Positions 3,943 through 32,010 of a stretch of DNA of 64,000 nt are shown piece by piece. Below the pieces are notes generated by a model, which was not told the origin of the DNA, ran no database searches, and saw only the letters and a list, made by a program, of their open reading frames with translations. Each line of letters starts with the position of its first letter. Position 1 is the stretch's first letter. The stretch spans positions 1,922,001 through 1,986,000 of the forward strand of contig NC_088794.1 of the NCBI RefSeq assembly GCF_011386835.1, in the 5' to 3' direction. The stretch is from Chrysemys picta bellii (taxonomy: Eukaryota). Both the position numbers and the translations under genes were made by a program.

Positions 3943-5469
<1,527 letters not shown>

Positions 5470-8495: not shown

Positions 8496-9679
8496 TGTGA
8501 CGTTGCCACCCATAAGGCTTTATAGAAATATGCTTATGGGTGTATATATAGAACATAACTAGAATGTGTTTTATGCTACATATGCCATGTAACATATCTC
8601 TGTAAAGGTTATGATCTACTGAATCTATTCATCCTATTTGTATGCATGTATCATTTTTGTATTCGAAGTTATAAATATTGGCTGCATACTTGTTTGATTC
8701 GGAGTAGGGTTTAGTGAAGCAGTTGGTCAGCTCCCTGAGAAAAGACTATTCTCAGTAAGTGCCCAATCAAGAAACCCTTAAGCCAACAATGAACTTGGAG
8801 ACACCAATCCACATCTGGATTTTCCCAGGAATGTGGCTTGGCTGGTAAGGAACTGAGTCATGCATGGACATGTGACTTGCCCAGGTGACTCCAGAACTCC
8901 ATTTGGTAGCTGGATTTTGCATAGGAGTGAGGAGGGGGTCTCCACCCACAAGAGAAAGTCTGTTTAAGCCCAGAGAAGACCCTTCCATTTTGTCTTCAGC
9001 TGGCTAAAGAGAGAGCCTCTCCACCCCCAAAGATACCTGAAAGAAACTGGAACAAAGGACAATAACTACAGGGGGTGTGAGTGATTGCTGGACCCAGGCT
9101 AAAAGGAGACTAGTCTGTAAAAGGAGCATTCTGGAACTAGTGAGATTATCTGTATTCAGTTTGATTAGACATAGATTTGCACATTTTATTTTATTTTGCT
9201 TGGTGAGTTACTTTGTTCTGTCTATTACTACTTGGAACCACTTAAATCCTACTTTCTGTATTCAATAAAATCACTTTTTACTTGTTAATTAACACAGAGT
9301 AGGTGTTTATACCTTGGGGGGCAAACAGCTGTGCATATCTCTCTATCAGTGTTATAGAGGGCGAACAATTTCTGAGTTTACCCTGTATAAGCTTTATACC
9401 AGGTAAAATGGATTTATTTGGGTTTAGACCCCATTGGGAGTTGGGCATCTGAGTGTTAGAGACAGGAACACTTCTGTAAGCTGCTTTCAGTCAAGCCTAC
9501 AGCTGTTAGGGGACGTGGTTCAGACCTGGGTCTGGGTTTGCAGCAGGCTAGCGGGTCTGGCTCAAACCAGGCAGGGCACTGAAGTCCTAAGCTGATGGGG
9601 CAGGAAAGCAGGGGCAGAAGTAGTCTTGGCACATCGGGTGGCAGCTCCCAAGGGGGGTTCTGTGATCCAACCCGTCACA
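8496..9679 (+). mobile_element. Solo LTR (~1.18 kb)
   Basis: Termini TGTGACG...CGTCACA, 5-bp TSD GAGGG (8491-8495; 9680-9684), internal AATAAA at ~9264. Confidence 0.88.
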
Positions 9680-10040
9680 GAGGGGCTCCAGGGCTAGTTG
9701 AGGGGGAGCAGTTACTGGACCAAGCATAGCTGTGATGGCTAATGTCTCCCTGATTTGGCCTGAATTCAGTAGACAGTCCGGAAAGTCTGATGGCCAGAAC
9801 GTTTTCATGGCTGCACCAGTTCTGATCCACCAACACCCAAGAGCAGACAGACAAGGCAAGGTATCTCAAAGCTGCTTTATTATAAAAGTTGGAGTTACAA
9901 ATATTGGGGGTCGTGTAACAAAATGAGGAAGGGATCACCCCACTTGGGGAGCAGGGGATCCCCACAATCCAGCATTAGTGAGTACATGCCAGTCAGAGTC
10001 TCTAATGGGGGAGTCCCCTGATTTTCTTGCGGGGCTCCCC

Positions 10041-11042
10041 TCAGAGCAGTTTGACCTCAAAGCAGATGCAATTGATGCTCTGACAGTCCGGGGGCTGGTA
10101 GGCACAGGCACAGTCACAGAGGGGGCAGCAGCGAGGGAAAGGGGGGCAGGTGCTGAGCTCCCAGCCCTGCAGAGAGAGAGAGAGAAAAAAAATGGGGCTG
10201 TTAACCTGCAGGACTACTCGCTCCTTGATATTAAACAGTGACTATTATGTGGCAGGTAGTCCTGATGTTAAGCAGTGGCTGGTAGCCCACAGGACTACCC
10301 GCCACAAGACATTTAAAGGCCGTATTAATCCGCAGGACGACGCTCCCAGGTTATTTACTAGGGGGTTGTAAACCCTGACTACCCACCACAAGAACATTTA
10401 TATACAGGACTGCCTGCCCCAGGATATGTAATGGGGCCAGTACCCCAAAGGGTTTGGGGGTCACTCACCTGGCGTCGGGGACAACAGGTGTCCAGGCAAC
10501 GGATGAGGGAGAGAGGGGCACAGTCGCACGCCTCGGCGCAGGCCAGGCAGCAGTGGCAGGGCCCCCCCAGCATCCCCTTCTCACACCAGCAACAGTCAGG
10601 GCAGAGTCCATGGGCCTGGGGAGTGGAGGGAGGGTGAGAGATGGAAGGGCCAACTCACCCCTCCCCTCAGCTGACCTGCCCAGCCCTGCTCTGACCCCCT
10701 AGGCCTGCCCCACCTGTGACACCCCTGAATATCCCCCCCATATCCACCCTGCCTCCCCCTCCACCATATCCTTCCCCACTGCCCCCCAGTATAGACCCCT
10801 GTCCCCCTATCTGTGCCCCCTTACCAGCAGGCAGTGGCGCAGCACGAGGATGAGGAGGAGGAGGAGCAGGTAGGCGGCCACAGTGATGAAGACAATGGCT
10901 GGGAGGGGCAGAAGGAGGGAGCTGGGGGGGCCCGGCGTGGGGGTCTACAACAGGGAGAGACAGGAGAGGGGGAGCAGGTCAGAGAGCCTGGGGGGAGACA
11001 CAAGGAGGGGGAGGCAGCGGAGGAGGGGAGACTTACAGCCAT
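10041..11042 (-). CDS. Small single-pass membrane protein with Cys-rich C-terminus (132 aa), LOC112694756-like; coding exons 11042-11037, 10944-10825, 10615-10469, 10166-10041
   Basis: Spliced product: MA|TPTPGPPSSLLLPLPAIVFITVAAYLLLLLLILVLRHCLL|AHGLCPDCCWCEKGMLGGPCHCCLACAEACDCAPLSLIRCLDTCCPRRQ|GWELSTCPPFPRCCPLCDCACAYQPPDCQSINCICFEVKLL*. All junctions are GT-AG phase 0. AATAAA (minus) at 9876-9881. It matches my recollection of the human protein encoded upstream of ALDOA (..PIPAIVFIAVGIYLLLL..PRCCPLCDCAC..DCQSLNCLCFEIKLR). Confidence 0.9.
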
Positions 11043-11689
11043 TCCTGGATTGGGGGGGATCCTCAGAGGGGTTGGGGTCTCTGCTCGCCCCTAGGGTGCC
11101 ACATCTGAGAAAGACAGACAGATCAGAGCCAACCCAGCAAGGACTGGTCCCCGTAAGCTGCCCCACTGAACCTCACCCCTATCCCCAAACCTACTGCCCC
11201 CACCAATCCACCCCAGCCTCAAACCTACCCACCCTAGGCAGGGAGCAGGTCCCAGAGGAGCAGGTTGCTGCCCCCAGCTACATGGTTCACTCTGAAACCT
11301 ACTGATCACGGTCCAACCCAGAGCCGTCCCTCGGGGGCGGGGCTTCAGCACCTGAGAGCGAGGCAAACGCTTATACCACATGACAGTGCATAGTCATCTG
11401 CTTAATTGATATTAATGATCCTCAGGCCCAGCCCATGATTGGTAGAGACCAGCTCCTCATGAATATTCATTGAAGTGGGGCCCCACCCCCTTCGTTAATA
11501 ACTAACATGCATATTAATTAGGCTGAGTTTGTCCCACCCCCAATTGACATTCAAATATGCAAATTATTCAAAAGACCTGTCCCTTATTATTGAAATATGC
11601 ATATTGATTAGGTCACGATCGCCCTCGTTGCTGTTCACATCTCATGAATATTGATTAGCACCAAACCAGTTCATGAATATTCATGAGTC

Positions 11690-22684: not shown

Positions 22685-25580
22685 CAGTGAAGGAGTCAGG
22701 GAACGGAGGAGGGATGCAGGATGGAGGGAAGCAGTCAGGGAATGGAGGAGGGATGCAGGATGGAGGGAAGCAGTCAGGGACCGGAGGAGGGATGCAGGAT
22801 GGAGGGAAGCAGTCAGGGACCGGAGGAGGGATGCAGGGATGGAGGAATGAGACAGGGACTGGAGGAGCAATGCAGGATGGAGGAATGAGACAGGGACTGG
22901 AGGAGCGATGCAGGGTGGAGGGAAGCAGTCAGGGAACGGAGGAGCAATGCAGGATGGAGGAATGAGACAGGGACCAGAGGAGGGATGCAGGATGAGGGAA
23001 GCAGTCACGGATTGGAGGAGGGATGCAGGGAAGGAGTCAGGGATGGAGGAAGGAGACAGGGATAGAAGAATGATAAAGGGAAAGAGACACTAGCATAGAA
23101 GGGATGGAGGAAAGGAAGCAGTGGAGGGAAGGAGGCAGTGCAGCAGAGGGATAGAAGCAGTGGAGGGATAGAGGGAAGGAGGCAGTGGCGGGAAGGAGGC
23201 AGTGGCAGTGGAGGGATGGGGGAAGGACGCAGTGGCAGCAGAGGGGTACAGGAATGGAAGCAGTGGAGGGATGGAGGTAAGGAGACAATGGCAGCGGAGG
23301 GATGGAGGCAGCGGAGGGATGGAGGCAGCGGAGGGATGGAAGGAAGGAGGCAGTGGCAGCGGAGGCAAGGAGGCAGTGGCAGCGGAGGGATGGGGGAAGG
23401 AGGCAGTGGCAGCAGAGGGATGGAGGCAGTGGCAGCGGAGGGATGGAAGCAGCGGAGGGAAGGAGGCAGTGTCAGCAGAGGGATGGAGGCAGTGGCAGCG
23501 GAGGGATGGGGGAAGGAGGCAGTGGCAGCGGAGGGATGGAGGCAGTGCAGCGGAGGGATGGGGGAAGGAGGCAGTGGCAGCAGAGGGATGGAGGCAGTGG
23601 CAGCGGAGGGATGGAAGCAGCGGAGGGATGGAGGCAGCGGAGGGATGGGGAAGGAGGCAGTGGCAGCGGAGGGATGGAGGCAGTGGCAGCGGAGGGATGG
23701 GGGAAGGAGGCAGTGGCAGCGGAGGGATGGAGGCAGTGGCAGCGGAGGGATGGGGGAAGGAGGCAGTGGCAGCGGAGGGATGGGGAAGGAGGCAGTGGCA
23801 GCAGAGGGATGGAGGCAGTGGCAGCGGAGGGATGGGGGAAGGAGGCAGTGGCAGCGGGAGGGATGGAAGCAGCGGAGGGAAGGAGGCAGTGGCAGCGGAG
23901 GGATGGAGGGAAGGAGGCAGTGGCAGCAGAGGGATGGAGGGATGGAAGCAGTGGAGGGAAGGAGGCAGTGGCAGCGGAGGGATGGAGGGAAGGAGGCAGT
24001 GGGAGCAGAGGGATGGAGGGATGGAAGCAGCGGAGGGAAGGTGGCAGTGTCAGTGGAGGGATGGGGGAAGGAGGCAGTGGCAGCGGAGGGATGGAGGCAG
24101 CGGAGGGAAGGAGGCAGTGGCAGCGGAGGGAAGGAGGCAGTGGCAGCGGAGGGATGGAGGCAGCGGAGGGAAGGAGGCAGCGGAGGGATGGAGGCAGTGG
24201 CAGCGGAGGGATGGAAGCAGCGGAGGGAGGAGGCAGCAGAGGGAAGGAGGCAGTGGCAGCGGAGGGATGGAAGCAGCGGAGGGAAGGAGGCAGCGGAGGG
24301 ATGGAGGCAGTGGCAGCGGAGGGAAGGAGGCAGTGGCAGCGGAGGGATGGAAGCAGCGGAGGGAAGGAGGCAGCGGAGGGATGGAGGGAAGGAGGCAGTG
24401 GCAGCGGAGGGAAGGAGGCAGCGGAGGGAAGGAGGCAGTGGCAGCGGAGGGATGGAGGCAGCGGAGGGAAGGAGGCAGTGGCAGCAGAGGGATGGAGGGA
24501 AGGAGGCAGTGGCAGCGGAGGGATGGAGGGATGGAAGCAGCGGAGGGAAGGAGGCAGCGGAGGGAAGGAGGCAGTGGCAGCAGAGGGATGGAGGGAAGGA
24601 GGCAGTGGCAGCGGAGGGATGGAGGGATGGAGGCAGTGGCAGTGGAGGGATGGAGGGAAGGAGGGCAGTGGCAGCGGAGGGATGGAGGCAGCGGAGGGAA
24701 GGAGGCAGTGGCAGCGGAGGGATGGAGGGATGGAAGCAGTGGAGGGATGGAGGCAGCGGAGGGAAGGAGGCAGTGGCAGCAGAGGGATGGAGGGAAGGAG
24801 GCAGTGGCAGCAGAGGGATGGAGGGAAGGAGGCAGTGGCAGCGGAGGGATGGAGGGATGGAGGCAGTGGCAGTGGAGGGATGGAGGCAGCGGAGGGATGG
24901 AGGCAGTGGCAGCGGAGGGATGGAGGCAGTGGCAATGGAGGGATGGAGGCAGCGGAGGGATGGAGGCAGTGGCAATGGAGGATGGAGGCAGCGGAGGGAA
25001 GGAGGCAGTGGCAGCGGAGGGATGGAGGCAGCGGAGGGATGGAGGCAGTGGCAATGGAGGGATGGAAGCAGCGGAGGGATGGAGGCAGAGGCAGCGGAGG
25101 GATGGAGGGAAGGAGGCAGTGGCAGCGGAGGGATGGAGGGATGGAAGCAGTGGCAATGGAGGGATGGAAGCAGCGGAGGGAAGGAGGCAGTGGCAGCGGA
25201 GGGATGGAGGCAGTGGCAATGGAGGGATGGAGGCAGCGGAGGAAGGAGGCAGTGGCAGCGGAGGATGGAGGCAGTGGCAATGGAGGGATGGAGGCAGCGG
25301 AGGGAAGGAGGCAGTGGCAGCAGAGGGAAGGAGGCAGCGGAGGGAAGGAGGCAGTGGCAGCGGAGGGAAGGAGGCAGTGGCAATGGAGGGATGGAGGCAG
25401 CGGAGGAAGGAGGCAGTGGCAATGGAGGGATGGAGGCAGCGGAGGGAAGGAGGCAGTGGCAGCGGAGGGAAGGAGGCAGTGGCAATGGAGGGAAGGAGGC
25501 AGTGGCAGCGGAGGGAAGGAGCAGTGGCAATGGAGGGATGGAGGCAGCGGAGGGAAGGAGGCAGTGGCAGCGGAGGGATG
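22685..25580. repeat. Purine-rich low-complexity tandem repeat (GGAGGCAGTGGCAGCGGAGGGAT variants) in a TLCD3B intron
   Basis: Directly visible. It produces the 800-aa pseudo-ORFs in several frames. Confidence 0.97.
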
Positions 25581-26171
25581 CAGCCATGCACTGGCTCATG
25601 AGGCAGAGGCTTGGAGGGCCCGTTTGTCAGGCCGAGGCAGCGGGCGGGGGGCAATGGGGTGTCCGTGCCGGCTGCTTAGCCTGGGTGGGTGGGACGTGCG
25701 AGGCCGGGGAGCAGCCTGCCCTGGTGGGCCACGCACAGCCCTGGGGGGGAGGGGGGGCCGCGAGGAGGGCAGCGGGCAGCTAGTGGGGGTGTTGGGGGGT
25801 AGTGCTGGGGAGTTGGCTGCTCTGGACAAGGATGGCCAGGGTTAGAGACTGCGGAGGGGTGACCTGGATGCCTTTGGCTTGGATTCCTGTGGGGGAGGGG
25901 GCCCCCTGGAGTCTGGGATCCCCGTGGGGGAGGGGCCCCCCAGAGGCTGGGGATCCCCCCACCTCTGCTCACAGCAGCACACCTGAGGGGATTTCAATGC
26001 AGTGACTTGGGACACCAGCTGGGCCATGTGCTCCCCCAGCAGCTCTCGCTAGGCCCCTCTGCACCCCACAGATTGCGGAGCAGCACTTATGGGCACAGAC
26101 CCTGGTGCCTCGGGCTGGCTGCCGGGGGGCTGTGGGTCGGCTCCCGTTAACCTCTCCTCCCTCCCCTGCAG

Positions 26172-26255
26172 GCTGGTCTCCTCCATCCAAGCCATCATGG
26201 CCTCCACAGCCGGATACATCATTTTCAGCTCCTGCCAGCACGTTATCGATGACCA
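26172..26255 (+). CDS. TLCD3B: TLCD3B exon 2 (LVSSIQAIMASTAGYIIFSSCQHVIDDQ); downstream exons not found
   Basis: Acceptor CCCTGCAG|, donor CA|GTGAGT. Matches human LVSSVQAIMASTAGYIVSTSCKHIIDDQ. Confidence 0.95.
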
Positions 26256-28229: not shown

Positions 28230-29380
28230 GAGGTGCCGGGCTCTGAGGGGGGAGGCGCTGGGCTCAGGCTCGCGGGGGGGCGGGACACGCTGGGCTCGGG
28301 CTCTGGGGGAGGTGCCAGGCTCCAGATGGGGGAGGTGCTGGGCTTGGTGGGGGGGGGCGCCGGGCTCTGCGGGGGGGCGCTGGGCTCAGGCTTGGGGGGT
28401 GGCACTGGGCTCAGGCTCGGGGGGGGGTGCCGGGCTCTGGGGGGGTGGCACTGGCTCAGGCTTGCGGGGGGCGCTGGGCTCAGGCTCTGGGAGGGGGGAG
28501 ATGCCAGGCTCTGAGGGGGGAGGCGCTGGGCTCAGGCTCGGGGGGGGGGGAGATGCCAGGCTCTGAGGGGGGAGGCGCTGGGCTCAGGTTCGGGGGGGGG
28601 GAATGCCAGGCACTGAGGGGGAGGCGCTGGGCTCAGGCTCGGGGGGGGGGGAGATGCCAGGCTCTGAGGGGGGTGGCACTGGGCTCAGGCTCGGGGGGGG
28701 GCGCTGGGCTCAGGTTCGGGGGGGGGGGAATGCCAGGCTCTGAGGGGGGAGGCGCTGGGCTCAGGCTCGGGGGAGGGGGGGAGATGCCAAGCTCTGAGGG
28801 GGGAGGCGCTGGGCTCAGGCTCGGGGGGGGGGGGAGATGCCAGGCTCTGAGGGGGGAGGCGCTGGGCTCAGGCTCGGGGGAGGGGGGGAGATGCCAAGCT
28901 CTGAGGGGGGAGGCGCTGGGCTCAGGCTCGGGGGGGGGGGAGATGCCAGGCTCTGAGGGGGAGGCGCTGGCCTCAGGCTCGGGGGGGGGAGGGAGGGGCC
29001 AGGCTCTGAGGGGGGAGGCGCTGGGCTCAGGTTCGGGGGGGGGGGGAATGCCAGGCTCTGAGGGGGGAGGCGCTGGGCTCAGGCTCGGGGGGGGGGAGAT
29101 GCCAGGCTCTGAGGGGGGGAGGCGCTGGGCTCAGGCTCGGGGGGGGGGGAGATGCCAGGCTCTGAGGGGGGAGGCGCTGGGCTCAGGCTCGGGGGGGGGG
29201 AGATGCCAGGGCTCTGAGGGGGGAGGCGCTGGGCTCAGGCTCGGGGGGGGAGGGAGGGGCCAGGCTCTGAGGGGGGAGGCGCTTGGGCTCAGGTTCGGGG
29301 GGGGGGGGATGCCAGGCTCTGAGGGGGGAGGCGCTGGGCTCAGGCTCGGGGGGGGGGGAGATGCCAGGCTCCAGAGGGGG
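28230..29380. repeat. G-rich minisatellite (GATGCCAGGCTCTGAGGGGGGAGGCGCTGGGCTCAGGCTCGGGGGGGG)
   Basis: About 20 tandem copies. Confidence 0.95.
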
Positions 29381-29730
29381 GAGGGTGCGTCCCCTCTGAC
29401 CTTGCAGCAGCTGTTGCCCGTCAATACTCCATCGATCCTCCCCGTCCCACCCACGAGGCCACGGTGCCGCCACGCCCCCCTGCCCCGCGCTCGCCAGCCT
29501 GAGCCCCACACACAACTCCCCCCCCAGTCCCTGGCACCCCCCAGCACTGCCCCCCTTCCCCAGCAGCCACCCATACCTTCCCTGCCCTGTGTGCCACCCC
29601 TGTCCCCTGTCCCCCCAGCACCCCCATACCTTCCCCTGCCCTGTGTGCTACCCCGGCCCCTGGCCCCCCAGCAGCCACCCATACCTTCCCTGCCCTGTGT
29701 GCCACCCCTGTCCCCTGTCCCCCCAGCAGC

Positions 29731-30230
29731 NNNNNNNNNNNNNNNNNNNNNNNNNNNNNNNNNNNNNNNNNNNNNNNNNNNNNNNNNNNNNNNNNNNNNN
29801 NNNNNNNNNNNNNNNNNNNNNNNNNNNNNNNNNNNNNNNNNNNNNNNNNNNNNNNNNNNNNNNNNNNNNNNNNNNNNNNNNNNNNNNNNNNNNNNNNNNN
29901 NNNNNNNNNNNNNNNNNNNNNNNNNNNNNNNNNNNNNNNNNNNNNNNNNNNNNNNNNNNNNNNNNNNNNNNNNNNNNNNNNNNNNNNNNNNNNNNNNNNN
30001 NNNNNNNNNNNNNNNNNNNNNNNNNNNNNNNNNNNNNNNNNNNNNNNNNNNNNNNNNNNNNNNNNNNNNNNNNNNNNNNNNNNNNNNNNNNNNNNNNNNN
30101 NNNNNNNNNNNNNNNNNNNNNNNNNNNNNNNNNNNNNNNNNNNNNNNNNNNNNNNNNNNNNNNNNNNNNNNNNNNNNNNNNNNNNNNNNNNNNNNNNNNN
30201 NNNNNNNNNNNNNNNNNNNNNNNNNNNNNN
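29731..30230. other. Assembly gap (500 N)
   Basis: Run of N of fixed placeholder size, flanked by VNTRs. Confidence 1.
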
Positions 30231-32010
30231 TCACACAAACCCCTCCCCCACCGTGTGACCCTCCCCTCACACAAACCCCTCCCCCACCGTGTGACCCTCC
30301 CCTCACACAAACCCCTCCCCCACCGTGTGACCCTCCCCTCCCCCGGACCCCTCCCCTCACAGAAACCCCTCCCCCACCGTGTGACCCTCCCTTCGCCGGG
30401 ACCCCTCCCCTCACAGAAACTCCTCCCCCACCGTGTGACCCTCCCCTCACACAAACCCCTCCCCCACCGTGTGACCCTCCCCTCGCCCGGACCCCTCCCC
30501 TCACAGAAACCCCTCCCCCACCATGTGACCCTCCCCTCACACAAACCCCTCCCCCACCGTGTGACCCTCCCCTCGCCCGGACCCCTCCCCCACCGTGTGA
30601 ACCTCCTCTCGCCCAGACCCCTCCCCTCACAGAAACCCCTCCCCCACCGTGTGACCCTCCCTTCGCCGGGACCCCTCCCCTCACAGAAACTCCTCCCCCA
30701 CCGTGTGACCCTCCCCTCGCCCGGACCCCTCCCCTCACAGAAACCCCTCCCCCACCGTGTGACCCTCCCCTCGCCCGGACCCCTCCCCTCACAGAAACCC
30801 CTCCCCCACCGTGTGACCCTCCTTCGCCGGGACACCTCCCCTCACAGAAATCCCTCCCCCACCGTGTGACCATCCCCTCGCCCGGACCCCTCCCCTCACA
30901 GAAACCCCTCCCCCACCGTGCGATCCTCCCTTCGCCGGGACCCCTCCCCTCACAGAAACCCCTCCCCAACCGTGTGACCCTCCCCTTGCCCGGACCCCTC
31001 CCCTCACAGAAACCCCTCCCCCACCGTGTGACCCTCCCCTCGCCGGGACCCCTCCCCTCACACAAACCCCTCCCCCACCGTGTGACCCTCCCCTCGCCCG
31101 GACCCCTCCCCTCACACAAACCCCTCCCGTCGCCAGGACCCCTCCCCCACCGTGTGACCCTCCCCTCGCCAGGACCCCCTCCCCTCACAGAAACCCCTCC
31201 CCCACCGTGTGACCCTCCCCTCGCCGGGACCCCTCCCCCACCGTGTGACCCTCCCCTCTCCGGGACCCCTCTCCTCACAGAAACCCCTCCCACACCATGT
31301 GACCCTCCCCTCGCCGGGACCCCTCCCCTCATACAAACCCCTCCCCCACCGTGTGATCCTCCCCTTGCCTGGACCCCTCCCCTCACACAACCCTCTCCCC
31401 CACCGTGTGACCCTCCCCTCGCCGGGACCCCTCCCCTCACAGAAACCCCTTCCCCACCGTGTGACCCTCCCCTTGCCTGGACCCCTCCCCTCACACAACC
31501 CTCTCCCCCACCGTGTGACCCTCCCCTCACAGAAACCCCTTCCCCACCGTGTGACCCTCCCCTCGCCGGAACCCCTCCCCTCACACAACCCTCTCCCCCA
31601 CCGTGTGACCCTCCACTCGCCGGGACCCCTCCCCTCACACAAACCCCTCCCCTCACACAAACCCCTCCACCACCATGTGACCCTCCCCTCGCCCGGACCC
31701 CTCCCCCACCATGTGACCCTCCCCTCGCCCGGACCCCTCCCCTCACAGAACCCACTCCCCCATCGTGTGACCCTCCCCTCGCCGGGACCCCCTCCCCTCA
31801 CAGAAACCCCTCCCCCACGGTGTGACCCTCCCCTCGCCCGGACCCCTCCCCTCACACAAACCCCTCCCCCACCGTGTGACCCTCCCCTCGCCCGGACTTC
31901 TCCCCTCACAGAAACTCCTCCCCCAACGTGTGACCCTCCCCTCGCCGGGACCCCTCCCCTCACAGAAAGCCCTCCCCCACCGTGTGGCCCCCTCCCTCAC
32001 GATCCTCCCC
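30231..32010. repeat. C-rich minisatellite (CCCCACCGTGTGACCCTCCCCTCGCCCGGACCCCTCCCCTCACAGAAAC)
   Basis: More than 30 tandem copies. Confidence 0.96.

What the first reader, a model, noticed from the sequence alone, without database searches (positions are those of the whole stretch)
10041..11104. Uncharacterised small membrane protein with an extremely Cys-rich tail, invisible in the ORF track
Seen: four phase-0 exons give a 132-aa protein with one hydrophobic segment (IVFITVAAYLLLLLLILVL) followed by ~90 residues containing over 20 Cys in CC/CxxC/CxC clusters, ending CQSINCICFEVKLL. It has its own AATAAA. Known from recall: it resembles the functionally uncharacterised human LOC112694756, whose exons were long treated as ALDOA 5' UTR. 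Inference: a conserved amniote protein, possibly heavily palmitoylated or metal-binding.
Basis: partly seen in the sequence, partly recalled or inferred. Interest (0 to 1): 0.72.

Follow-up and report, generated by a model that had tools for sequence, protein, structure and literature searches.

The report
Cysteine-rich membrane protein gene beside ALDOA
This is a real, expressed turtle gene for a 132-residue single-pass membrane protein with 23 cysteines in its tail; its human counterpart was found in 2019 inside the ALDOA 5' UTR and still has no known function, and relatives turned up here from sponges to mammals.

Summary
On the minus strand, four phase-0 coding exons (11042-11037, 10944-10825, 10615-10469, 10166-10041) encode 132 aa with one transmembrane helix and 23 Cys. 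Spliced contigs from runs in four studies reproduce every junction. They add a non-coding first exon (11842-11667) and a poly(A) end at 9862, after the AATAAA at 9881-9876.

It is the turtle orthologue of human LOC112694756 / ENSG00000285043. Mudge et al. 2019 (PMC6886504) described that gene as an uncharacterised 139-aa CDS inside the ALDOA 5' UTR. Gene order matches: a TLCD3B exon lies head-to-head upstream and a CRK-like gene lies downstream.

A profile search found 126 cluster representatives. Named members include lamprey, fishes, a hemichordate, an annelid, molluscs, crustaceans, horseshoe crabs, a priapulid, corals and four sponges. Two intron positions are shared with coral. There is no Pfam family, no solved structure and no functional paper.

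Charge asymmetry around the helix (K+R 0.28 versus 2.56) predicts the N-terminus outside and the Cys tail in the cytosol. Sixteen Cys positions are conserved across animals. I infer metal-thiolate binding plus palmitoylation next to the membrane; neither is tested.

The gene itself is known. The wide distribution and the independent turtle transcript are additions.

The parts
11667..11842 (-). Exon 1, non-coding 5' UTR. An upstream ORF starts here at ATG 11777-11775.
   Evidence: All four RNA runs show the joint 11104->11667, which skips 562 nt with GT..AG ends on the minus strand. Contigs end at 11842, 11822 or 11814. The block 11719-11836 is 84% identical to Carettochelys L001 9230-9349.
11037..11104 (-). 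Exon 2. It holds the end of the 50-codon uORF (TGA 11065-11063) and the main start codon ATG 11042-11040 (context GGAATGG), followed by Ala.
   Evidence: An AG acceptor lies before 11104 and a GTAAGT donor after 11037. All four runs show the joint 10944->11037. The ATG-GCx-GTAAGT arrangement is conserved in Carettochelys.
10825..10944 (-). Exon 3 (40 codons). It encodes a short Pro/Thr/Ser-rich N-terminal segment, the transmembrane helix and RHCLL.
   Evidence: Translation. AlphaFold2 gives a helix at residues 16-43 with pLDDT above 90. The intron after RxCL[LK] sits at the same position in gecko, hemichordate and coral.
10469..10615 (-). Exon 4 (49 codons). This is the first cysteine-rich block, containing the motifs CAEACDC and CLDTCCP.
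   Evidence: Translation. It is 82-88% identical to tortoise orthologues and covered by RNA contigs.
9862..10166 (-). Exon 5. It carries the last 41 codons (CCPLCDCACAYQPPDCQSINCICFEVKLL), the stop at 10043-10041, a 3' UTR, AATAAA at 9881-9876 and the cleavage site at about 9862.
   Evidence: The protein is 100% identical to the Gopherus C-terminus. The X6 contig runs into 23 T just before 9862 on the + strand, which is a poly(A) tail on the minus strand. The AATAAA was located.
4378..5439 (-). Downstream neighbour: a CRK-like adaptor gene (SH2 plus SH3). It is context, not part of the gene.
   Evidence: Pfam SH2 at 2.7e-16 and SH3 at 2.7e-15. Gecko has the same gene order.
22547..22684 (+). 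Upstream neighbour, head-to-head: TLCD3B-like exon 1 (MFHALVAGSIVFPGLFLL...). The start coordinate is approximate.
   Evidence: tblastn with the first coding exon of the Carettochelys TLC-domain gene gives E 7.5e-29. That gene carries PF03798.

Best explanation
The locus is the turtle orthologue of vertebrate LOC112694756 / ENSG00000285043 (zebrafish si:ch211-198p11.6).

Shown:
- It is an independently transcribed, polyadenylated gene with five exons, four of them coding, giving an 816-nt mRNA.
- A 50-codon upstream ORF ends 21 nt before the main start codon.
- The product is a 132-aa single-pass membrane protein belonging to a family found across animals.

Predicted, probability about 0.8: the short Pro/Thr/Ser-rich N-terminus faces the lumen or outside, and the 90-residue tail with 23 Cys faces the cytosol (type III orientation).

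Inferred mechanism:
- The 16 cysteine positions conserved from sponges to mammals (C47, C53, C64, C65, C72, C74, C82, C87, C104, C105, C108, C110, C112, C119, C124, C126) fold only around metal ions. They would form Zn(II) or Cu(I) thiolate sites or clusters held at the cytosolic face of a membrane. Probability about 0.5.
- The less conserved cysteines next to the membrane (C40, C50, C51) are S-acylated. Probability about 0.6.
- The nearly invariant Tyr27 and the small residues in the helix suggest that the helix packs against itself or a partner. This is speculative.
For: Identity:
- Turtle, squamate, amphibian, fish and mammal orthologues with E 1e-76 to 1e-26, many named 'LOC112694756 homolog'.
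- Gene order TLCD3B / this gene / CRK-like in the window and in gecko and Carettochelys.

Expression and structure:
- Spliced contigs from four runs in four studies match the exon model exactly (814 = 303+147+120+68+176). There are no indels or base differences in the exons, and one contig has a poly(A) tail.

Selection:
- pN 0.205 against pS 0.77 versus gecko; dN/dS 0.13 in the last exon and 0.06 over the last 27 codons.
- Against Carettochelys, four of the six differences in the last exon are synonymous, all in its final part.

Breadth:
- 126 representatives with E<=1e-3.
- Named members in lamprey, hemichordate, annelid, priapulid, horseshoe crab, molluscs, crustaceans, an orthonectid, coral and sponges.
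- Intron positions shared with coral and hemichordate.

Topology, over 43 members:
- The 12-residue flanks carry K+R 0.28 on the N side and 2.56 on the C side.
- The N side is net acidic and has almost no Cys. The C side has a mean of 23 Cys.
- There is no N-terminal signal-peptide-like segment.

Tail:
- AlphaFold2 models the helix with confidence, but the tail only reaches pLDDT 40-60 even with 51 sequences. That fits a fold that needs a cofactor.
- Conserved Cys, Asp84 and Asn123 are mapped.
Against: - No metal-binding or acylation evidence exists for any member.
- No Pfam family, no solved relative and no fold match link the tail to a known metal-binding domain.
- An even number of conserved Cys would also fit eight disulfides if the tail were extracellular.
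- The low pLDDT could simply mean disorder.
- The window protein has Leu77 where 86% of members have Pro.
- Alligator and Carettochelys lack the CAEACDC motif. The Caretta protein model and the Carettochelys assembly are frameshifted in the last exon. The constraint may therefore be relaxed in this clade.
- E-values for very Cys-rich sequences can be inflated by composition. The distant homologies rest on shared architecture and motifs as well as on score.
Confidence: 0.55

Rival explanations
1. The tail is not a metal site. It is a heavily S-acylated cytosolic segment lying flat on the membrane and acting as a lipid-anchored organiser or a palmitoyl sink, in the way Cys-rich tails next to the membrane work in viral spike proteins or Sprouty domains.
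For: The Cys cluster begins two residues after the helix (RHCLL, then GLCPDCCWC) on the predicted cytosolic side. The tail is poorly ordered in AlphaFold2 models.
Against: The best conserved cysteines are 60-90 residues from the membrane, in fixed-spacing motifs (CxCxC...PxCxxxNCxCF) with conserved Asp, Asn, Pro and Phe between them. That pattern suggests a defined fold rather than lipidation alone. The membrane-proximal Cys (C40, C50, C51) are the least conserved.
Confidence: 0.25
2. The orientation is the opposite (N-terminus in the cytosol, tail outside). The tail would then be a disulfide-knotted extracellular domain acting as a ligand or receptor.
For: Sixteen conserved Cys is an even number. 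A short beta-hairpin is predicted at residues 122-129. Automatic annotators gave some members names of extracellular Cys-rich proteins, such as 'scavenger receptor class F' and 'protein delta homolog 2'.
Against: The positive-inside rule points strongly the other way: K+R 0.28 on the N flank against 2.56 on the C flank over 43 members, with an acidic N flank. N-x-S/T sequons are somewhat denser on the N side (1.3 against 0.8 per 100 aa), and 11 of 43 members have one in a segment of 8-67 residues. No EGF or other extracellular Pfam domain is hit. Those names reflect composition only.
Confidence: 0.15
3. The reading frame is only a regulatory upstream ORF or a chance ORF in ALDOA leader exons, and produces no functional protein.
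For: In human and mouse the CDS is co-transcribed with ALDOA and no separate poly(A) site is known (PMC6886504 supplement). The turtle mRNA itself carries a 50-codon uORF ahead of the main ATG.
Against: In the turtle it is a separate polyadenylated transcript, with a CRK-like gene between it and where ALDOA is reported to lie. Purifying selection acts at the amino-acid level. Motifs and intron positions are conserved from sponges and corals to mammals.
Confidence: 0.02

Closest known systems
Human LOC112694756 / ENSG00000285043 (Mudge et al. 2019, PMC6886504); mouse ENSMUSG00000114515; zebrafish si:ch211-198p11.6 / ENSDARG00000097765
   Same: Orthologous. It has four coding exons, about 132-139 aa, the same helix and Cys motifs, and a position between TLCD3B and ALDOA. 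It is uncharacterised in every species.
   Different: In human and mouse the CDS is reported only on transcripts that run on into ALDOA, with no poly(A) site of its own. In the turtle, as in zebrafish, it is a separate polyadenylated unit, and a CRK-like gene lies between it and the reported ALDOA position. Four of the six turtle orthologues compared end in KLL; most other members end in KLR.
Metallothioneins
   Same: Very high Cys density with CC, CxC and CxxC spacing, and no confident fold predicted without a cofactor. This is the working analogy for the tail.
   Different: There is no detectable sequence relationship and no Pfam hit. This protein is membrane-anchored, contains aromatic residues, and has fixed non-Cys residues (D84, N123, F127).
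Palmitoylated Cys-rich segments next to the membrane (coronavirus spike endodomain, Sprouty/SPRED domain)
   Same: A cluster of cysteines starts immediately on the cytosolic side of a membrane anchor.
   Different: The sequences are unrelated. Here the conserved cysteines extend 90 residues from the membrane in ordered motifs.
Keratin-associated proteins and SMCP (names given by automatic annotation to many orthologues)
   Same: Cysteine-rich composition only.
   Different: Those proteins have no transmembrane helix, different repeats and different loci. The names are compositional mis-labels.

Membership tests
LOC112694756 / ENSG00000285043 orthologue group | Significant full-length sequence similarity to named orthologues | tested here: met
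   The window exons are 82-100% identical to Gopherus and Chelonoidis 'LOC112694756 homolog' proteins. The turtle profile hits mammals, amphibians and fishes at E 1e-26 to 1e-45.
LOC112694756 / ENSG00000285043 orthologue group | Four coding exons with introns at conserved positions | tested here: met
   The window has four phase-0 coding exons. The same boundaries are found in gecko, and the RxCL[LK] and last-block boundaries in coral and hemichordate. The paper lists four coding exons for human.
LOC112694756 / ENSG00000285043 orthologue group | Position between TLCD3B and ALDOA in the block orthologous to 16p11.2 | tested here: inconclusive
   TLCD3B exon 1 lies head-to-head at about 22.55 kb. 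A CRK-like gene lies downstream, as in gecko. ALDOA itself was not found in the window. Its adjacency comes only from an earlier scan note that I did not check.
LOC112694756 / ENSG00000285043 orthologue group | Transcribed and spliced as predicted | tested here: met
   Spliced contigs in four runs from four studies, one with a poly(A) tail.
Metallothionein (Pfam PF00131 and relatives) | Sequence match to a metallothionein family model | tested here: not met
   No Pfam family at E<=10 for the window exons, and none at E<=0.1 for 51 family members apart from scattered transmembrane-helix noise.
Metallothionein (Pfam PF00131 and relatives) | Binds several Zn, Cd or Cu ions through Cys thiolates | not testable with these tools
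   This needs metal analysis of purified protein.
CYSTM (PF12734) small Cys-rich membrane proteins | Match to the CYSTM model, a Cys-rich C-terminal tail anchor | tested here: not met
   There is no Pfam hit. Here the helix is N-terminal and the Cys lie outside it.
S-acylated membrane proteins (a functional class) | Cysteines within about 10 residues of the cytosolic end of a transmembrane helix | tested here: met
   C40, C47, C50, C51 and C53 follow the helix, which ends at about residue 37-38, on the positively charged side. Acylation itself was not tested.

The most novel reading that the evidence does not exclude
This gene belongs to an undescribed protein family as old as animals, found from sponges to humans. 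Its members would be membrane-tethered proteins with a cytosolic tail that binds metal in clusters, like a metallothionein. The family has no Pfam entry and no functional literature. Its human member sits unnoticed inside the 16p11.2 BP4-BP5 deletion/duplication interval, fused to ALDOA transcripts. If so, it could be an overlooked dosage-sensitive gene of that interval and a new class of membrane-anchored metal or redox handling protein.
Probability: 0.35. Interest if true: 0.8.

Novelty: new member of a known kind. Interest (0 to 1): 0.55.

Why it matters
The turtle gene itself is an orthologue of a gene published in 2019 and already modelled in other turtles, so it is not a discovery. Three things make it worth attention.

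1. Sponges, corals and many bilaterian phyla keep the same helix, the same Cys motifs and two of the same intron positions. No domain database or paper that I could find describes it.

2. The turtle, like zebrafish, shows the separate-gene arrangement: a gene with its own promoter exon and poly(A) site, and a CRK-like gene between it and the reported position of ALDOA. That suggests the mammalian fusion with ALDOA transcripts is secondary.

3. The human member lies in the 16p11.2 BP4-BP5 interval, which is linked to autism, schizophrenia and obesity. It is usually ignored there. The topology and conserved-cysteine map given here make its biochemistry directly testable.

Tried and rejected
- **Pfam:** no family for the three coding exons at E<=10. 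Over 51 family members only isolated transmembrane-helix noise appeared.
- **PDB by profile:** only transmembrane-helix matches, at E>=0.046.
- **Foldseek against the PDB** with the better AlphaFold2 model: nothing. The tail pLDDT is only 40-60, so I did not use the VIA-align searches, which drop low-confidence stretches.
- **Literature** by gene identifiers (si:ch211-198p11.6, Gm57854, LOC103691235, ENSMUSG00000114515, ENSDARG00000097765): no functional paper. AC093512.2 has named different genes over time and is not informative.
- **The look-up of encoding contigs** failed for P0002, P0004 and P0012, whose products are not the longest on record.
- **A C-terminal di-leucine sorting motif (EVKLL):** rejected. 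Most members end in KLR or KMR, and the coral members carry long extensions.
- **N-glycosylation sequon enrichment on the N side:** only weak (1.3 against 0.8 per 100 aa), so it is not used as main evidence.
- **The N-terminal extension of Gopherus and Chelonoidis isoforms (MYPAVEAM...):** it maps to window 26219-26160. It is absent from all four RNA contigs and out of frame with the turtle start codon here. I treat it as a longest-ORF artefact or a rare alternative 5' exon.
- **Microsynteny with TLCD3B or aldolase outside vertebrates:** not seen within 10 kb in Ptychodera or Porites.
- **Rfam on 9000-12500:** nothing.
- **Sequences I left alone:** I did not fetch or compare contigs behind unnamed Logan-derived proteins that look primate-like (for example P0032, P0060, P0121). 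I did not use the human protein sequence printed in the paper's supplement as a query.

Full report
**1. What is in the sequence**

Read on the minus strand, window 11104-10041 contains four coding exons with GT-AG introns, all in phase 0:
- 11042-11037 (Met-Ala)
- 10944-10825 (40 codons)
- 10615-10469 (49 codons)
- 10166-10041 (41 codons plus TGA)

Joined, they give 132 aa. The order is a Pro/Thr/Ser-rich start, the hydrophobic stretch AIVFITVAAYLLLLLLILVL, then RHCLL and a tail of about 90 residues. The tail holds all 23 cysteines and ends CQSINCICFEVKLL. An AATAAA lies at 9881-9876. The only omissions are that the gene lies on the minus strand and that 11104 follows an AG acceptor, so it is not a transcript start.

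**2. Is it transcribed and spliced that way?**

A word index found two kinds of run.
- Five runs hold 100% of the sampled words. These are genomic DNA.
- Fourteen runs in four studies, under two organism labels, hold 39-41%. That fits a spliced transcript without its introns.

I laid four of the second kind, one per study, on 9500-13100. Each contains a single contig of 770-839 nt. The pieces are 9862/9864-10166, 10469-10615, 10825-10944, 11037-11104 and 11667-11842.

The 814-nt contig equals 303+147+120+68+176 exactly. The 839-nt contig adds 23 T before 9862 on the + strand, which is a poly(A) tail 14 nt past the end of the AATAAA. No base differences or indels fall in the exons.

The runs are only guessed to be RNA. 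Intron-less, poly(A)-tailed contigs are nevertheless what cDNA gives.

The gene therefore has five exons, and the first (11842-11667) is non-coding. The 816-nt mRNA has its longest ORF, the 132-aa protein, at position 239 in a good context (GGAATGG). A 50-codon upstream ORF (ATG 11777, TGA 11063) ends 21 nt before it.

**3. What is it related to?**

Pfam finds nothing for the exons, even at E<=10.

Word-indexed protein searches first found Caretta caretta LOC125638299, then other turtles. With a three-turtle profile they found 62 proteins. These include squamates, alligator, a caecilian, axolotl, coelacanth, sturgeon and many mammals, among them echidna and marsupials.

Many are named 'LOC112694756 homolog' by NCBI. 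Others carry compositional mis-labels such as 'keratin-associated protein 10-x' or 'SMCP'. Some 87-residue proteins lack the first Cys-rich block, and one of them is filed under 'Aldolase, fructose-bisphosphate A'.

LOC112694756 sits between TLCD3B and ALDOA in human 16p11.2 (PMC11354020).

Mudge et al. 2019 (PMC6886504) described the human gene ENSG00000285043 as follows:
- It is a new 139-aa CDS with four coding exons, found by PhyloCSF inside ALDOA 5' UTR exons.
- It is 'apparently conserved amongst vertebrates' and is an 'uncharacterised protein'.
- It is co-transcribed with ALDOA in human and mouse, but is a separate polyadenylated locus in zebrafish.

**4. Synteny**

In the window, a CRK-like ORF with SH2 and SH3 domains lies downstream at 5439-4378 on the minus strand. 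The first coding exon of a TLC-domain gene (MFHALVAGSIVFPGLFLL...) lies head-to-head at about 22.55-22.68 kb on the plus strand. A 74-bp minisatellite with 69 copies and a retroelement fragment lie between that exon and this gene.

Gecko has the same order: TLC gene (-), this gene (+), SH2-SH3 gene (+). Carettochelys has the TLC gene head-to-head, and its locus is colinear with window 24114-9680.

Earlier scan notes place YPEL3/TBX6 before the window and TAOK2, TMEM219 and KCTD13 after it, consistent with a block orthologous to 16p11.2. I did not find ALDOA itself inside the window.

**5. The family is much older than amniotes or vertebrates**

A coral protein (Porites, E 4e-6) appeared in the word search. 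I built a 15-sequence profile and ran the exhaustive search. It returned 126 cluster representatives at E<=1e-3, of which 54 were at E<=1e-10. Local hmmsearch over all 180 proteins fetched so far found 81 that match over essentially the whole profile.

Cluster look-ups named the following:

| Group | Named members |
|---|---|
| Vertebrates | lamprey, frog, smelts |
| Hemichordate | Ptychodera |
| Priapulid | Priapulus |
| Annelid | Capitella |
| Chelicerates | Limulus, Tachypleus |
| Molluscs | Argonauta, Pinctada, Aplysia |
| Crustaceans | an amphipod, a copepod |
| Orthonectid | Intoshia |
| Sponges | Amphimedon, Corticium, Geodia, Halichondria |

Cys-rich composition can inflate scores, so I did not rely on scores alone. 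These sequences also share the architecture and the non-Cys motifs:
- the helix pattern P-A-I-V-x-I-A-V-G-x-Y
- R-x-C-L directly after the helix
- A-E-x-C-D-C-x-x-P-S-x-x-x-C-L-D-x-x-C-P
- the terminal C-x-C-x-C ... P-[DE]-C-x-x-[IV]-N-C-x-C-F

The intron after RxCL[LK] is at the same place in turtle, gecko, hemichordate and coral. The intron before the last Cys block is also shared. Truncated database models that read into those introns show the same thing.

No bird, insect or nematode name appeared among the hits I could name. I cannot tell loss from poor assembly.

**6. Constraint**

Between turtle and gecko, over the 90 codons of the two Cys-rich exons, pN is 0.205 and pS is 0.77. dN/dS is 0.13 in the last exon and 0.06 over its last 27 codons.

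Across 51 animal members, 16 Cys positions are conserved in at least 65% of sequences. Tyr27 in the helix is at 96%. Arg38, Gly45, Pro77, Asp84, Pro88 and Asn123 are at 80% or more.

Some oddities occur within turtles and crocodilians:
- The window protein has Leu77 in place of the conserved Pro. The RNA contigs confirm it.
- Alligator lacks the CAEACDC motif, and the Carettochelys assembly lacks it too.
- The Carettochelys assembly has three single-base insertions in C-runs of the last exon.
- The Caretta protein model reads that exon in another frame.

Three of the four synonymous differences against Carettochelys lie downstream of the insertions (the fourth lies within the shifted stretch), and no amino-acid-changing difference follows them. 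So I suspect assembly errors, but real decay is not excluded.

**7. How it probably works**

Over 43 family members, the 12 residues before the helix carry on average 0.28 Lys+Arg and 0.81 Asp+Glu. The 12 residues after it carry 2.56 Lys+Arg. There is no signal-peptide-like start.

By the positive-inside rule this is a type III membrane protein. The short N-terminus faces out or into the lumen, and the Cys-rich tail faces the cytosol. In the reducing cytosol 16-23 cysteines will not be disulfide-bonded.

The realistic fates are metal coordination and S-acylation. I favour both, in different parts:
- **Distal motifs:** fixed spacing, with conserved Asp, Asn, Pro and Phe between the cysteines. 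These look like metal-thiolate sites.
- **Cysteines next to the membrane:** more variable. These look like acylation sites.

AlphaFold2 is confident about the helix (pLDDT above 90) but not the tail (40-60), even with 51 sequences. That fits a cofactor-dependent fold but does not prove it.

All of this is inference. No member has been studied biochemically as far as I could find.

**8. Comparison and verdict**

The locus passes three of the four membership tests for the LOC112694756 orthologue group (sequence, exon structure, expression). The synteny test is inconclusive, because ALDOA itself was not seen in the window. It fails the sequence tests for metallothionein and CYSTM, which remain analogies only.

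The gene is known. The turtle copy is a new member of that group.
- the verified five-exon, independently polyadenylated turtle transcript, with its uORF
- the distribution across animals, with shared intron positions
- a topology prediction and a map of the conserved cysteines

The turtle gene alone is of modest interest. The family is of higher interest: an old, unnamed family with a member in a disease-linked human interval.

Noticed in passing
window 11777-11063 (minus strand, spliced across exons 1 and 2): A 50-codon upstream ORF in the 5' UTR ends 21 nt before the main start codon, and shorter in-frame ATGs lie inside it. It could limit translation of the main ORF. I did not check whether it is conserved in other species.
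   Followed up: partly
window 26160-26219 (minus strand): This sequence encodes MYPAVEAMMAWMEETSLQGR, the N-terminal extension of the Gopherus and Chelonoidis 'isoform X1/X2' models. It lies 15 kb upstream, beyond TLCD3B exon 1. None of the four RNA contigs uses it, and it is out of frame with the main ATG in this genome.
   Followed up: partly
L001 12707-12857 (Carettochelys) and protein P0001 (Caretta): The last coding exon carries three single-base insertions in C-runs in the Carettochelys assembly, and the Caretta protein model reads it in a shifted frame. Carettochelys also has a 12-nt deletion that removes the conserved EACDC motif. These are either assembly errors in GC-rich DNA or relaxed constraint in some turtles.
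   Followed up: partly
window 13466-18636 and 20300-21014: A G-rich 74-bp minisatellite of about 69 copies at 94% identity continues on the far side of an insertion of about 1.6 kb. The insertion's ORFs look like a CR1/LINE reverse transcriptase (18.5-20.1 kb, + strand). Together they fill most of the gap between this gene's promoter and TLCD3B.
   Followed up: no
window 9603-9680: A segment of about 77 nt has very high contig depth in the RNA runs (up to about 6,500), and the loose ends on both sides run into many different sequences. It looks like a short interspersed repeat present in many transcripts. There was no Rfam match.
   Followed up: partly
window 23171-25580 and 28341-31998: There are further long GC-rich tandem arrays with periods of 17-40 bp and 52-105 bp. 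One of them flanks the 500-N gap at 29731-30230. They create very long spurious ORFs on both strands.
   Followed up: no
proteins P0048, P0050, P0052, P0055 (mammals): These 87-residue proteins lack the residues of the first Cys-rich coding exon. That exon is bounded by phase-0 introns in the turtle, so skipping it would stay in frame. They keep the helix and the terminal motif. Whether the same form exists in the turtle was not visible in the contigs.
   Followed up: no
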